This document shows, in pieces, positions 15,816-21,205 of a stretch of 62,869 nt of DNA. Below the pieces are notes generated by a model. That model was given only the letters and a program-made list of their open reading frames with translations, had not been told where the DNA came from and searched no databases. Position numbers and translations under genes: made by a program. This DNA comes from Scyliorhinus canicula (lineage: Eukaryota), in assembly GCF_902713615.1 (NCBI RefSeq), contig NW_024055731.1, forward strand, positions 1 through 62,869, in the 5' to 3' direction. Positions within the stretch are counted from its first letter, which is position 1; every line of letters begins with the position of its first letter.

Positions 15816-16065
15816 CACAGGTGAATTTGAAAAACAGATGTCTCAACATAAAAAAAGAGATGTATAACTTATGTCCAAGTTAACATAGTTATATTTTGCT
15901 TATGCTCGATCTTAAAATTGGACTTCTTGGTCCGGAGGTATGGTTCACGCTTGGTGCCCAACTGTCATCAGTTTCCATGATGTGGAGATGCCGGCGTTGG
16001 ACTGGGGTGAGCACAGTAAGAAGTCTTACAACACCAGGGTTAAAGTCCAACAGGTTTGTTTCAAA

Positions 16066-16100
16066 CACGAGCTTTCGGAGCACGGCTCCTTCTTCAGGTG
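16066..16100 (-). ncRNA. Minimal type I hammerhead ribozyme motif (Penelope end)
   Basis: Reverse complement of 20980-21014. Confidence 0.7.
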
Positions 16101-18447
16101 AATGGAAAGGCTTGTTCCAGACATGTTTATATAGACACAGTCAGAGATGCCCGGAATGCGAGCACCTGCAGGCAATCAAATCATCAAAGATGCAGAGAGA
16201 GAGGAGTACTACAGGTTTAAAGAGGTGTGAATTGTCCAAGCCAGTTCAGCGGTAGGCCTCTGCAAGTCCAGGCTTGTGGTGGGGGACGAATGTAATGCGA
16301 CATGAATCCCAGATCCCGGTGAGTCCGCATTCATGCGTGCGGAACTTAGCTAAAGTTTTTGCCCAGCAATTTTGCGTGTCGCGTCTCCTGAAGGCCTCCT
16401 TGTAGAATGCTGACCCGGCGATCAGAGGCTGAATGGTCCTTGACTGCTGAAGTGTTCCCCAACTGGACGGGAACAGTCTGCCTGTTGATAGTCGCACGAT
16501 GCCCGTTTATTCGTTGTCGCAGTGTCTGCATGGTCTCGCCAATGTACCACGCTTCGGGACATCCTTTCCTACCGCGTATGAGGTAGACTACATTGGTCGA
16601 GTTCGCACGAGTATGCGCCGCGTACCTGGTGGGTGGTGTTTCCACGTGTAATGGTGGTGTCCATGTCGATGATCTGGCATGTCTTGCAGAGATTACCCTG
16701 GCAGGGTTTTGTGGTGTTGTGGTTGCTGTTCTGAAGGCTGGGTAATTTGCTGCAAACAATGGTTTGTTTGAGGTTGCGCGGTTGTTGAAGGCCAGTAGTG
16801 GGGGTGTGGGGATGACCTTGGCAAGATGTCCATCCTCGCTGATGATGTGTTGGAGCTGCGAAGAAGATGTCGTAGTTTCTCCGCCCCAGGAAGTACTGGA
16901 CGACGAGGGTACTCTGTCAGTGGTGTCCCGTGTTTGTCTTCTGAGGAGGTTGGTGCGGTTTTTTTGCTGTGGCGCGGTGGAACTGTCGATCAAGAGTCGA
17001 GCGCATATCCGTTCGTACGAGGGCATCTTTCAGCATCTGTAGGTGTCTGTTGCGCTCCTCCTTGTTGAGCAGATCCTGTGTATACGGAGGGCTTGTCCAT
17101 AGGGGATGGCTTCTTTAATGTGTCTTCGGGGTGAAAGCTGGAGAAGTGGCGCATCGTGAGATTATCTGTGGGCTTGCGGTAAAGCGAGTGCTGAGGTGAC
17201 CGTCCTTGATGGAGACGAGTGTGTCCAAGAATGGAACTGAATTTGGAGAATAGTCCATGGTGAGTTTGATGGTGGGATGGAACTTATTGATGTCACGTGT
17301 AGTCGTTCAGTATGTCTCGCCGTGGGTCCAAAGGAAAAAATGTCATCGATGATCTGGTGTATAGCATCGGTTGAAAGTCCTGGTGGTGAGGAAGTCTGTT
17401 CAAACCTTGTGCATGAAGAGTTGGCATATGAGTGCAAATTTGGTCCCCATGGCTGTTCCGTGCGTCTGGATGAAGAATTTGTTGTCGAAGGTGAAGACGT
17501 TTGTGGTCTAGAATGAAAGGAATGAGTTGCAGAATTGCGTCTGGAGATTGGCAGTTGTCGGTGTTGAGGACTGAGGCTGTTGCAGCAATGCCGTATGTCA
17601 TGGGGGATGTGGTGTAGAGTGCCGAGACATCATTGTGACGATGGAATGTTCCTGGTTCAACTGGTCCATGGGTGCTGAGTTTCTGAGGACGTCGTGTGTC
17701 GCGACAGAAGCTGGGTGTACCTTGTACGATGGGTTTCAAGATGCCCCTCGATGTGGCCCGAGAGGTTCTCACACAGGGTCCCATTGCCTGAAACGATAGG
17801 ACGGCCTGGGTGTGTGGCCTTGTGTATTTTCGGGAGGGCAGTAGAGATCTCCAATGCGGGGATACGTGGGATGAGAGCACGTAGGGTGTTTGAAGGTCTG
17901 ATCTAAGGTCTTGATCAGTCTGCTGAGTTGGCGGATGTGTTCCTTGGTTGGATCTGCGGGTAACTGCCTGTAGTGTTCCTGGTTGTCGAGTTGTCTGTAT
18001 ACTTCTTTGCAGTAGTCTGTTCTGTTCAGTATGACGGTGGCCCCTCCTTTGTCTGCTGGTTTGATGACGATGTTGCGGTTGGTCTTGAGAGTGCGGATGG
18101 CGTTGCGTTGTGCTTGGGTGACGTTTGAGGCTGCCTTGTGATTGCGAGTGATGAATCTGGCATTGACACGACTTCTGACAGCTTGAGCATACATGTCGAG
18201 TCTAGGGCAGCGGCCTTCCGGAGGGGTCCAATTTGACTCTTTCCTTTTCGGTTGCTGCACTGCAGATCTCGCGGTCTGCTGTTCCGGTTCATTGGTCGTG
18301 TCCCTGGGTTCGCTGTCGGCCTCTTGGGGTCTGTGGAAGAATTCCTGGAGCCTCATTCGCCTGATGAATTCCTCCGTATCTGCCGCGAGACTGATGGGGT
18401 CCATTTTGTTGGTGGTGCAGAAATTGAGCCCTCTGCTGAGGACTTCG

Positions 18448-20085
18448 ATGAGACAGCAATACTATGCCACCTACATGCACACCAAGAACAGGAAGCTTGA
18501 GAAACTTGGCATCACCACCAGCAGCATCAAGCTTCTCCCGGTACAACAGTCGAACAACAATACAGGGAAATCCATTGTCAACTTGTCAGGACTGCACCCT
18601 TCAACCAGACGAAATCGAAGTCCTCAGCAGAGGCTCAATTCTGCACCACCACCAAAATGGACCCCATCAGTCTCGCGGCAGATACGAGGAATCATCAGGC
18701 GAATGAGGCTCGGGAATTCTTCACAGGACCCCAAGAGGCCGACAGCGAACCCAGGGACACGACCAATGAACCGGAACAGCAGACCGCGAGATCTGCAGTG
18801 CAGCAACCGAAAAGGAAAGAGTCAATTGGACCCCTCGGAAGGCCGCTGCCCTAGACTCGACATGTATGCTCAAGCCGTCAGAAGTCGTGTCAATGCCAGA
18901 TTCATCACTCGCAATCACAAGGCAGCCTCAAACGTCACCCAAGCACAACGCAACGCCATCCGCACTCTCAAGACCAACCGCAACATCGTCATCAAACCAG
19001 CAGACAAAGGAGGGGCCACCGTCATACTGAACAGAACAGACTACTGCAAAGAAGTATACCGACAACTCGACAACCAGGAACACTACAGGCAGTTACCCGC
19101 AGATCCAACCAAGGAACACATCCGCCAACTCAGCAGACTGATCAAGACCTTAGATCCAGACCTTCAGAACACCCTACGTGCTCTCATCCCACGTAATCCC
19201 CGCATTGGAGATCTCTACTGCCTCCCGAAAATACACAAGGCCAACACACCAGGCCGTCCTATCGTTTCAGGCAATGGGACCCTGTGTGAGAACCTCTCTG
19301 GCCACATCGAGGGCATCTTGAAACCCATCGTACAAGGTACACCCAGCTTCTGTCGCGACACGACGGACTTCCTACAGAAACTCAGCACCCATGGACCAGT
19401 TGAACCAGGAACATTCCTCGTCACAATGGATGTCTCGGCACTCTACACCAGCATCCCCCATGACGACGGCATTGCTGCAACAGCCTCAGTCCTCAACACC
19501 GACAAACTGCCAATCTCCAGAAACAGCAATTCTGCAACTCATCCGTTTCATTCTAGACCACAACGTCTTCACCTCGACAACAAATTCTTCATCCAGACGC
19601 ACGGAACAGCCATGGGGACCAAATTTGCACCTCAATATGCCAACATCTTCATGCACAAGTTTGAACAGGACTTCCTCACCACACAGGACTTTCAACCGAT
19701 GCTATACACCAGATACATCGATGACATTTTTTTCCTATGGACCCACGGCGAGACATCACTGAAACGACTACACGATGACATCAATAAGTTCCATCCCACC
19801 ATCAAACTCACCATGGACTATTCTCCAAATTCAGTTCCATTCTTGGACACACTCGTCTCCATCAAGGACGGTCACCTCAGCACCTCGCTTTACCGCAAGC
19901 CCACAGATAATCTCACGATGCTCCACTTCTCCAGCTTTCACCCGAAACACATTAAAGAAGCCATCCCCTATGGACAAGCCCTCCGTATACACAGGATCTG
20001 CTCAGACAAGGAGGAGCGCAACAGACACCTACAGATGCTGAAAGATGCCCTCAGTACGAACGGGATATGGCGCTCGACTCATTGA
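18448..20085 (+). CDS. Penelope-type reverse transcriptase (5'-truncated, frameshifted before the endonuclease)
   Basis: KPADKGG, YCLPKIHK...PGRPIVSG, LVTMDVSALYTSIP, QTHGTAMGT, RYIDDIF, PFLDT, YRKPT motifs. Confidence 0.93.
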   Translation: MRQQYYATYMHTKNRKLEKLGITTSSIKLLPVQQSNNNTGKSIVNLSGLHPSTRRNRSPQQRLNSAPPPKWTPSVSRQIRGIIRRMRLGNSSQDPKRPTANPGTRPMNRNSRPRDLQCSNRKGKSQLDPSEGRCPRLDMYAQAVRSRVNARFITRNHKAASNVTQAQRNAIRTLKTNRNIVIKPADKGGATVILNRTDYCKEVYRQLDNQEHYRQLPADPTKEHIRQLSRLIKTLDPDLQNTLRALIPRNPRIGDLYCLPKIHKANTPGRPIVSGNGTLCENLSGHIEGILKPIVQGTPSFCRDTTDFLQKLSTHGPVEPGTFLVTMDVSALYTSIPHDDGIAATASVLNTDKLPISRNSNSATHPFHSRPQRLHLDNKFFIQTHGTAMGTKFAPQYANIFMHKFEQDFLTTQDFQPMLYTRYIDDIFFLWTHGETSLKRLHDDINKFHPTIKLTMDYSPNSVPFLDTLVSIKDGHLSTSLYRKPTDNLTMLHFSSFHPKHIKEAIPYGQALRIHRICSDKEERNRHLQMLKDALSTNGIWRSTH

Positions 20086-20895: not shown

Positions 20896-20979
20896 TGATT
20901 TGATTGCCTGCAGGTGCTCGCATTCCGGGGCATCTCTGACTGTGTCTATATAAACATTTCTGGAACAAGCCTTTCCATT

Positions 20980-21014
20980 CACCTGAAGAAGGAGCCGTGC
21001 TCCGAAAGCTCGTG
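20980..21014 (+). ncRNA. Minimal type I hammerhead ribozyme motif (Penelope end)
   Basis: CAC-CTGAAGA-A-GGAGC cgt GCTCC-GAAA-GC-TC-GTG: CUGANGA and GAAA cores, stem II hairpin, palindromic AGCT helix III, UH site, short stem I CAC/GTG. Confidence 0.72.
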
Positions 21015-21205
21015 TTTGAAACAAACCTGTGGACTTTAACCTGGTGTTGTAAGACTTCTTACTGTCATCAGTTTCGACAGTTTAGTCTTCGGAAATGCCC
21101 TTTCTTTTCCCAGTAACTGAAGCATTCATTCATCTGAATTTCCGCTTTAATACCAGAACATATTCAAAATCTGATTGATTTCTGTCGGACTCTAATCCAG
21201 GCACC

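What the first reader, a model, noticed from the sequence alone, without database searches (positions are those of the whole stretch)
15961..21075. Penelope insertion with two outward-facing 3' ends inside one TSD (5.1-kb palindrome)
Seen: two near-identical arms of about 2.45 kb, each with RT, GIY-YIG and the terminal repeat, joined head-to-head through about 165 bp present once (18450-18614), all between 15-bp direct repeats. The flanks differ from each other, arguing against a fold-back read artefact. Established: L1 twin priming inverts without duplicating, and Penelope elements often carry inverted partial repeats. Inference: both target-strand 3' ends primed reverse transcription from an RNA 3' end and the two 5'-truncated cDNAs were joined, i.e. 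bidirectional TPRT. The hairpin could also yield dsRNA or cruciform instability beside V genes.
Basis: partly seen in the sequence, partly recalled or inferred. Interest (0 to 1): 0.75.

Follow-up and report, generated by a model that had tools for sequence, protein, structure and literature searches.

The report
Mirror-image Penelope retroelement insertion in shark
A young 5.1-kb insertion of a shark Penelope-like retrotransposon lies as two head-to-head, 5'-truncated copies inside one 15-bp target duplication; this is the insertion shape already described as typical for the class, so it is a clean example, not a new phenomenon.

Summary
Two inverted arms (15976-18449 on the minus strand, 18447-21060 on the plus strand) point their 3' ends outward. 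They abut with a 3-nt overlap and sit between the only two copies of a 15-mer in the window. The "165 bp present once" is just the longer arm's extra 5' sequence.

The element is a canonical Penelope-like element (PLE): reverse transcriptase (RT), C-terminal GIY-YIG endonuclease, a minimal hammerhead motif, and a 37-nt 3' "tail" on one arm only.

An inverted 5'-truncated copy, one target-site duplication (TSD) and a tail at one end are described as the typical PLE structure (PMC3846280, PMC8557442). A purified PLE protein cleaves and extends both target strands and starts reverse transcription at two sites one tail-length apart (PMC11167929). Here each arm carries RNA-derived sequence that the other lacks, which argues against simple snap-back copying.

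- **Recurrence:** one clear and one probable further palindromic insertion lie in this window, and the scan has noted others on other DNA of this genome.
- **Sequence quality:** the arms differ mainly by about 68 one-base indels in a mosaic pattern, which looks like unpolished long-read noise. One-versus-two-template tests are therefore not possible.
- **Not verified:** spanning reads and an empty site.

The parts
15961..15975 (+). Left copy of the 15-bp target-site duplication ACTGTCATCAGTTTC
   Evidence: exact 15-mer, only two copies in the window, both abutting the element ends
15976..16012 (-). 37-nt 3' 'tail' of the left arm (element sense on the minus strand), absent from the right arm
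   Evidence: The same 35-37-nt extension follows ...CTTACTGT in the copies at 44347-44381 and 57604-57639, and in most genomic copies (loose-end consensus behind 21065)
16013..18449 (-). Left arm body: a 5'-truncated PLE copy (part of the N-terminal region, RT, GIY-YIG EN, 3' UTR/pLTR). It carries many one-base indels outside 18181-18449
   Evidence: Inner part 18150-18449 gives one continuous, sensible reading frame
18447..18449 (.). 3-nt overlap (GAT) shared by the 5' ends of both arms: the head-to-head junction
   Evidence: contig match to the plus-strand arm starts at 18447; inverted match of the left arm ends at 18449
18450..18613 (+). Single-copy centre: the extra 5' sequence of the longer right arm. 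It encodes part of the PLE N-terminal region
   Evidence: (record 26)
18614..21060 (+). Right arm body, mirrored by the left arm. It ends without a tail; ACTGT at 21061-21065 is shared between element end and TSD
19396..19794 (+). Reverse transcriptase core (Pfam RVT_1, residues 402-534 of ORF 18193-20085)
   Evidence: Closest proteins are shark PLE-type proteins, up to 86% identity
20371..20793 (+). Cys-rich linker plus GIY-YIG endonuclease (residues 43-183 of ORF 20245-20892)
   Evidence: 43% identity to the GIY-YIG-bearing C-terminus of P0021; Atlas 0.96 to GIY-YIG clusters; weak hit to T4 endonuclease II
20983..21011 (+). Minimal hammerhead-like motif in the terminal repeat: CUGAAGA, one bulged A, 5-bp helix II, GAAA, palindromic AGCU. 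It is mirrored at 16069-16097 on the minus strand
   Evidence: Read from the sequence against the min-HHR features listed in PMC4209133. No Rfam model calls it
21061..21075 (+). Right copy of the 15-bp target-site duplication
56070..57649 (.). Second, older palindromic insertion of a related family. 10-bp TSD GATTAATATT at 56070-79 and 57640-49. Tail-less minus-strand arm 56080-57212. Plus-strand arm 57213-57603 with a 36-nt tail at 57604-57639
44347..45401 (-). Simple (non-palindromic) 5'-truncated copy of the same young family, 99.2% identical to the right arm, with a 35-nt tail and a 10-11-bp TSD (G)GTTAAAGTCC. It is inserted into an older miniature inverted pair

Best explanation
This is one retrotransposition event of a young, very abundant shark Penelope-like element (PLE), carried out by target-primed reverse transcription from both sides of a staggered double nick.

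Proposed steps:
1. The GIY-YIG endonuclease nicked the two target strands 15 bp apart, leaving two 3'-OH ends.
2. Each end primed cDNA synthesis on an element RNA, so two RNA molecules or two units of a tandem transcript were needed.
3. The top-strand end started at the distal RT start site, which gave the left arm its 37-nt tail.
4. The bottom-strand end started at the proximal site, helped by 5 nt of ACAGT/ACUGU pairing, which gave the tail-less right arm.
5. Synthesis stopped after 2.47 kb on the left and 2.62 kb on the right.
6. The two cDNA 3' ends annealed through 3 complementary bases (GAT/ATC at 18447-18449). Each was then extended on the other, which completed both strands and produced the head-to-head palindrome inside one TSD.

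Shown: the anatomy, the TSD, the tail asymmetry, the junction overlap, and the PLE identity of the element. Inferred: the order of events, the number of RNA templates, and the mutual second-strand priming.

Both copies lack the 5' part of the element, so the insertion is a dead end.
For: Anatomy and TSD.

Each arm has element sequence that the other lacks. The left arm has the 37-nt tail at 15976-16012, the same tail as in other copies and in most genomic copies (loose ends behind 21065). The right arm has the 164-nt 5' extension at 18450-18613, which is normal element sequence (record 26). Neither arm can therefore be a mere copy of the other.

The two kinds of outer end lie 35-38 nt apart, and both kinds recur in other copies in the window. 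This matches the two adjacent RT start sites and the 'tail' of PMC11167929.

The same paper reports that the full-length PLE protein cleaves and extends both top and bottom strands and is predicted to dimerise.

The architecture recurs with different arm lengths, junctions and TSDs at 56070-57649 and, probably, at 44280-45540. So these are independent events, not one copied unit.

Published descriptions of the same layout: PMC3846280 and PMC8557442.
Against: - No read or contig was shown to bridge either outer junction or the centre. No empty-site allele was seen (the family is so abundant that only fragments are listed).
- The assembly is noisy at the locus, so fine detail at the junctions could be off by a base or two.
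[quoted passage not shown] In contrast, all three palindromes here carry exactly one tail, which simple independent choice does not predict (n = 3 only).
- Arkhipova et al. 2013 preferred self-priming on an antisense template for head-to-head repeats.
Confidence: 0.68

Rival explanations
1. Self-priming or snap-back. A single cDNA (or an antisense RNA) folded back on itself and was copied, so one arm is a copy of the other. This is the explanation favoured for head-to-head PLE repeats by Arkhipova et al. 2013.
For: PMC3846280 discussion. The 3-nt GAT/ATC overlap at 18447-18449 would also allow a cDNA 3' end to fold back 165 nt and prime on itself.
Against: A copied arm cannot hold sequence that is missing from its template. 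The shorter left arm has the 37-nt tail that the longer right arm lacks, and the right arm has 164 nt that the left lacks. Copying back along the first cDNA should run into the target flank and give an inverted flank duplication. Instead the TSD is direct and the flanks are unrelated. The second example shows the same reciprocal asymmetry.
Confidence: 0.1
2. Assembly artefact. A fold-back or chimeric long read, or a mis-join of two copies, created a palindrome that does not exist in the genome.
For: About 68 one-base indels between the arms against 23 substitutions. The best short-read runs hold only 0.47 of the 31-mers. Long-read palindromes are a known artefact class, and PLE tandem/inverted structures are known to trouble assemblies (PMC8557442). 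No bridging contig was shown.
Against: A fold-back read gives reverse-complementary flanks and an inverted TSD. Here the TSD is direct, occurs only twice in the window, and the flanks are unrelated. Both outer ends fall exactly on the two canonical 3' ends of the family. The noise is mosaic and complementary between the arms: the inner 270 bp is clean on the left and noisy on the right, and the reverse holds further out. That pattern is what polishing does when reads cannot choose between two truly near-identical inverted arms. The right flank is noisy too (10 missing letters in about 180), so the noise is not specific to the palindrome. The same architecture occurs elsewhere in the window and is documented in the literature.
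Confidence: 0.07
3. Two separate events. Either a second copy later inserted in the opposite orientation exactly at the 5' end of the first, or a post-insertion inverted duplication or recombination between two copies.
For: The family is extremely abundant and young (depths; 99.2% copy at 44382-45401). It also inserts into its own copies.
Against: Two insertions would each carry their own TSD. No second copy of the 15-mer, and no other direct repeat, lies at the inner junction. Recombination or inversion between two copies would not leave a matching 15-bp direct repeat at the two outer ends. A replication-type inverted duplication would not end exactly at the element's tail.
Confidence: 0.05
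4. The palindrome is copied as a unit. A read-through transcript of a palindromic master element is reverse-transcribed whole, so arm lengths and inner junctions are inherited.
For: An unchecked first-reader note reports another palindromic copy in this genome with '2.47-kb inverted arms' (s1-243523), the same length as the shorter arm here.
Against: The other palindromes in this window have quite different junctions: arms of 1.13 and 0.43 kb, and of about 116 and 67 nt. A cDNA of a read-through RNA would end at the transcription start, not exactly at the canonical tail end next to a TSD. The other locus could not be fetched for comparison.
Confidence: 0.05

Closest known systems
Typical Penelope/PLE insertion structure (Evgen'ev & Arkhipova 2005; Arkhipova et al. 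2013, PMC3846280; Craig et al. 2021, PMC8557442)
   Same: An inverted 5'-truncated copy lies head-to-head with the main copy, so that inverted terminal repeats flank the whole unit. One short TSD of variable length encloses it. A 30-40-nt 'tail' is present at one end only. There is a high rate of 5' truncation, and a minimal hammerhead motif sits in the terminal repeat.
   Different: Both copies are 5'-truncated and nearly equal in length (2.47 and 2.62 kb). There is no full-length copy and no direct pseudo-LTR, and the junction lies inside the ORF rather than at a pLTR palindrome.
In vitro activity of PAc, a Poseidon PLE of Anolis carolinensis (Frangieh et al. 2024, PMC11167929)
   Same: Both target strands are cleaved and extended. 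Reverse transcription starts at two adjacent internal sites, and the spacing between them equals the genomic tail. Initiation does not need homology to the target, as with the tail-bearing left arm here.
   Different: The paper shows short products on oligonucleotide targets and does not link them to inverted genomic copies. It saw no strand difference in start site, whereas the genomic palindromes here carry one tail each. The tail-less arm here does show 5 nt of primer-template homology.
L1 twin priming (Ostertag & Kazazian 2001; from general knowledge, not read here)
   Same: The second-strand 3'-OH also primes on RNA. The insertion is flanked by one TSD, and the two cDNAs are joined by microhomology.
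   Different: Twin priming starts internally on the same RNA and yields an inversion with little or no duplication. Here both primers start at the element's 3' end region, so 2.47 kb is present twice.

Membership tests
Penelope-like elements (EN+ PLE, Penelope/Poseidon-Neptune type) | PLE-type reverse transcriptase | tested here: met
   Pfam RVT_1, E 3.4e-9. 1,849 homologues at E<=1e-20. The best are shark proteins (86% identity to a Scyliorhinus torazame protein) with the RVT_1 + PF28514 + PF26215 (+ GIY-YIG) architecture, also seen in turtle, amphioxus and tick proteins. No PLE-specific phylogeny was made.
Penelope-like elements (EN+ PLE, Penelope/Poseidon-Neptune type) | C-terminal GIY-YIG endonuclease fused after the RT | tested here: met
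   43% identity (E 6e-36) to residues 656-797 of P0021, where Pfam GIY-YIG scores 25.9 bits against a cut-off of 22.6. Atlas score 0.96 to GIY-YIG clusters. Directly on the window the match is only sub-threshold, E 0.013. In the assembly the RT and EN frames are separated by frameshifts.
Penelope-like elements (EN+ PLE, Penelope/Poseidon-Neptune type) | [quoted passage not shown] | tested here: met
   37 nt on the left arm and none on the right. 36 nt on one arm of the second example. 35 nt on the simple copy.
Penelope-like elements (EN+ PLE, Penelope/Poseidon-Neptune type) | Tandem or inverted terminal repeats formed by adjacent 5'-truncated copies, within a short TSD | tested here: met
   Inverted arms and a 15-bp TSD. 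No direct pLTR is present, because both copies are truncated.
Penelope-like elements (EN+ PLE, Penelope/Poseidon-Neptune type) | Minimal hammerhead ribozyme motif in the terminal repeat | tested here: inconclusive
   The motif at 20983-21011 has CUGANGA, a bulged base before G10.1, a G10.1-C11.1 pair, GAAA and a palindromic AGCU, as listed in PMC4209133. Rfam gives no hammerhead hit even at E<=10. Cleavage was not tested.
L1-type twin priming | Inversion without duplication, with the second primer annealing internally on the same RNA | tested here: not met
   2.47 kb is duplicated in inverted orientation, and both arms begin at the element's 3' end region.

The most novel reading that the evidence does not exclude
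The palindrome may be the primary product of a symmetric, dimeric PLE particle that routinely primes on both nicked strands, rather than a by-product. In that case the two primings would be mechanistically non-equivalent: exactly one end gets the tail in all three palindromes of this window. The two cDNAs would serve as each other's second-strand templates through annealing of their 3' ends. If the 2.47-kb arm reported at another locus of this genome ends at the same element position, there would also be a preferred stop or annealing site. With thousands of young copies, this shark genome would then be a natural data set for solving how PLEs build their inverted repeats.
Probability: 0.15. Interest if true: 0.55.

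Novelty: already known. Interest (0 to 1): 0.22.

Why it matters
How PLEs make their tandem and inverted insertion structures is still called undefined by the specialists (PMC8557442). This locus is an unusually readable case. It has a perfect 15-bp TSD, two long arms, a tail on one arm only, and a 3-nt junction overlap. The reciprocal asymmetry of the arms argues for two independent RNA-templated syntheses and against simple snap-back, which agrees with the 2024 in vitro finding that both strands are extended.

On its own it adds one example to a described pattern. Its value would come from a genome-wide count in this shark. For the host, the insertion sits about 130-230 bp upstream of a TCR V segment and at the edge of a tRNA array. 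No effect on either was tested.

Tried and rejected
- **Reads:** The look-up of sequencing runs and read laying were used once each, which is the cap. The family is so abundant (word depth 10^4-10^5, against about 20-80 in the unique flank) that the listed pieces do not include junction-bridging contigs. No 15975-to-21076 joint appears among the 15 joints shown, and 280 more were not shown. Spanning support and the empty site therefore stay open. The two other species laid (X9, X13) do not cover the unique flank.
- **Paralogous empty site:** the left flank belongs to the last unit of the 2.4-kb tRNA-array repeat, but that homology stops at about 15950. No paralogue crosses the insertion point.
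- **One versus two templates from arm differences:** not possible. Differences are dominated by one-base indels that are private to one arm or the other in a mosaic pattern. The few substitutions are private to either arm when compared with the family majority in reads (table 3).
- **Rfam:** no hammerhead or other RNA family in 15000-22000 or in the terminal 146 nt.
- **Solved structures:** no match for the RT ORF. There is only a weak hit (E 0.2) of the EN ORF to T4 endonuclease II.
- **Survey of other copies:** A look-up of the central junction in earlier findings by sequence was blank.
- **Hammerhead look-alike in the TSD:** the reverse complement of the TSD reads GAAA followed by CUGAUGA. 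I took this for a chance resemblance to hammerhead core boxes, because the order and the absence of helices do not fit a ribozyme.
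Full report
**Observation**

The repeat finder returns an unbroken series of inverted matches from the outer ends (16050/21030) to near the centre (18422/18639). It also returns an exact 15-bp direct repeat, ACTGTCATCAGTTTC, at 15961-15975 and 21061-21075. The 15-mer occurs nowhere else in the window, even with two mismatches. blastn of the reverse-complemented left arm against the right arm gives one alignment of 2,474 columns with 23 mismatches and 68 gap openings.

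The flanks are not mirror images of each other. The only inverted match outside the repeat is an older 89-bp solo fragment of a related element at 15727-15815. A fold-back read would give an inverted, not a direct, copy of the flanking 15-mer.

**Anatomy**

- The left arm lies on the minus strand (element sense) and the right arm on the plus strand, so both 3' ends face outward and the 5' ends meet.
- The palindrome stops at 18449 and 18614.
- The stretch 18450-18613 is colinear with the right arm. It is ordinary element sequence. A 1.7-kb short-read contig from a related organism reads straight through it and continues upstream of 18447 with further element sequence (record 26; loose end before 18447).
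- The right arm is therefore a copy 5'-truncated at about 18447 (2.62 kb), and the left arm a copy truncated at the position equivalent to 18614 (2.47 kb). The two share three bases, GAT, at 18447-18449.
- The outer ends differ. The left arm runs 37 nt beyond ...CTTACTGT (15976-16012). The right arm ends at ...CTT followed by ACTGT, which is also the start of the TSD.

**Identity**

- The right arm carries Pfam RVT_1.
- The closest proteins are shark proteins, up to 86% identity to one from Scyliorhinus torazame. They have the RVT_1/PF28514/PF26215 architecture, with GIY-YIG in some members.
- The C-terminal ORF aligns at 43% identity (E 6e-36) with the end of a turtle protein in which Pfam GIY-YIG passes its threshold. 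The protein atlas puts it next to GIY-YIG clusters at 0.96.
- The terminal repeat holds a motif at 20983-21011 with the features of the minimal PLE hammerhead listed by Cervera and de la Peña (PMC4209133). No Rfam model reports it.
- This is a canonical endonuclease-containing Penelope-like element.

**Assembly quality**

The arms differ mostly by single-base indels, and these are distributed as a mosaic.

- In the outer 1 kb, a third copy (44382-45401, 99.2% identical to the right arm) serves as referee. The left arm has 20 private indels, the right arm 4 and the third copy 1.
- In the inner 270 bp the situation is reversed. The left arm gives one continuous, sensible reading frame, while the mirrored part of the right arm hops between frames at least five times. 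The related-species contig matches the left arm there without gaps.
- The best short-read runs hold only 0.47 of the 31-mers of the stretch.
- The unique right flank lacks about 10 letters in about 180 relative to short-read contigs (records 8 and 24).

This is what residual long-read error looks like after polishing reads have been assigned to only one of two indistinguishable inverted arms. It implies that the true arms are nearly identical.

**Other copies in the window**

- At 56070-57649 there is a second, older palindromic insertion of a related family. It has a 10-bp TSD (GATTAATATT), a tail-less minus-strand arm of 1.13 kb and a plus-strand arm of 0.43 kb with a 36-nt tail.
- At 44347-45401 there is a simple 5'-truncated copy with a 35-nt tail and a 10-11-bp TSD. 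It has inserted into what looks like a third, miniature inverted pair (44280-44346 plus 45411-45540). One arm of that pair again has a diverged tail and the other has none. Its boundaries are uncertain.
- Arm lengths, junctions and TSDs all differ, so these are independent events.
- Earlier notes of this scan report further palindromic PLE insertions on other DNA of the same shark genome, of 190 bp, 740 bp and 5.6 kb. I could not check them.

**Comparison with what is known**

- Arkhipova et al. 2013 describe the 'typical Penelope structure' as an ORF with pseudo-LTRs and an adjacent inverted pLTR, flanked by a 9-bp TSD. [quoted passage not shown]
- Craig et al. [quoted passage not shown] They add that a 30-40-bp tail is often present at one end only, and that such structures trouble assemblies (PMC8557442).
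- Frangieh et al. 2024 show that a purified PLE protein cleaves and extends both top and bottom strands, unlike R2 and L1. Reverse transcription starts at two adjacent internal sites whose spacing is the tail (PMC11167929).

**Mechanism**

The direct TSD lies immediately outside each 3' end. This is the geometry expected if both 3'-OH ends of a 15-bp staggered cut primed cDNA synthesis.

- The tail-bearing left arm starts without homology to the primer.
- The tail-less right arm starts where the primer end ACAGT can pair with ACUGU in the RNA.
- The three-base overlap at the centre is complementary between the two cDNA 3' ends (GAT and ATC). The two cDNAs could therefore have annealed and completed each other's second strand.
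- Each arm has RNA-derived sequence that the other lacks: the tail on the shorter arm and 164 nt on the longer arm. Neither can be a snap-back copy of the other, and the second example shows the same reciprocity. This is the main point this locus adds against the self-priming model.
- All these steps are inferred from one product. None was observed.

**What could not be done**

- There is no paralogous empty site. Homology of the left flank to the tRNA-array unit ends at about 15950.

**Verdict**

The locus is a real and young, though not read-verified, example of the documented PLE inverted insertion form. Interest is low to moderate and lies mainly in the genome-wide test that this shark family would allow.

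Noticed in passing
window 56070-57649: A second palindromic PLE insertion, about 80-83% identical to the young family. It has a 10-bp TSD GATTAATATT, unequal arms of 1.13 kb and 0.43 kb that abut directly, and a tail only on the shorter arm.
   Followed up: yes
window 44269-45540: A young 1.05-kb simple PLE copy (44347-45401, 99.2% identical to the right arm, with a 35-nt tail) sits inside the 3' end of an older miniature inverted PLE pair, duplicating (G)GTTAAAGTCC. The older pair seems to have its own roughly 11-bp TSD with one mismatch (GTTTGCTGTGA / GTTTTCTGTGA) and a diverged tail on one arm. The family thus inserts into its own terminal repeat. The boundaries of the old pair are uncertain.
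   Followed up: partly
window 15727-15815: An 89-bp solo 3' fragment of a related PLE (83-90% identical), tail-less, ending at ACTGT next to an A-run, 146 bp left of the TSD and in the same orientation as the left arm. It is older and appears unrelated to the main event.
   Followed up: partly
window 15820-15975: Homology of the left flank to the 2.4-kb tRNA-array repeat unit (copies near 2075, 4480, 6860, 9290, 11708, 14135) ends at about 15950, only 10-25 bp from the insertion site. The palindrome therefore sits almost exactly at the boundary between the array and the V-gene region. Whether that is coincidence was not resolved.
   Followed up: partly
window 21151-21640: The TCR V segment right of the insertion reads with several frame breaks. 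Short-read contigs of two samples hold about 10 letters more than the window in 21151-21334. One-base deletions in the assembly, rather than a pseudogene, may explain the broken frame.
   Followed up: no
window 15961-15975 (minus strand): The reverse complement of the TSD reads GAAA directly followed by CUGAUGA, the two conserved boxes of a hammerhead core. They are in the wrong order and lack helices, and there is no Rfam hit. This is probably chance.
   Followed up: partly
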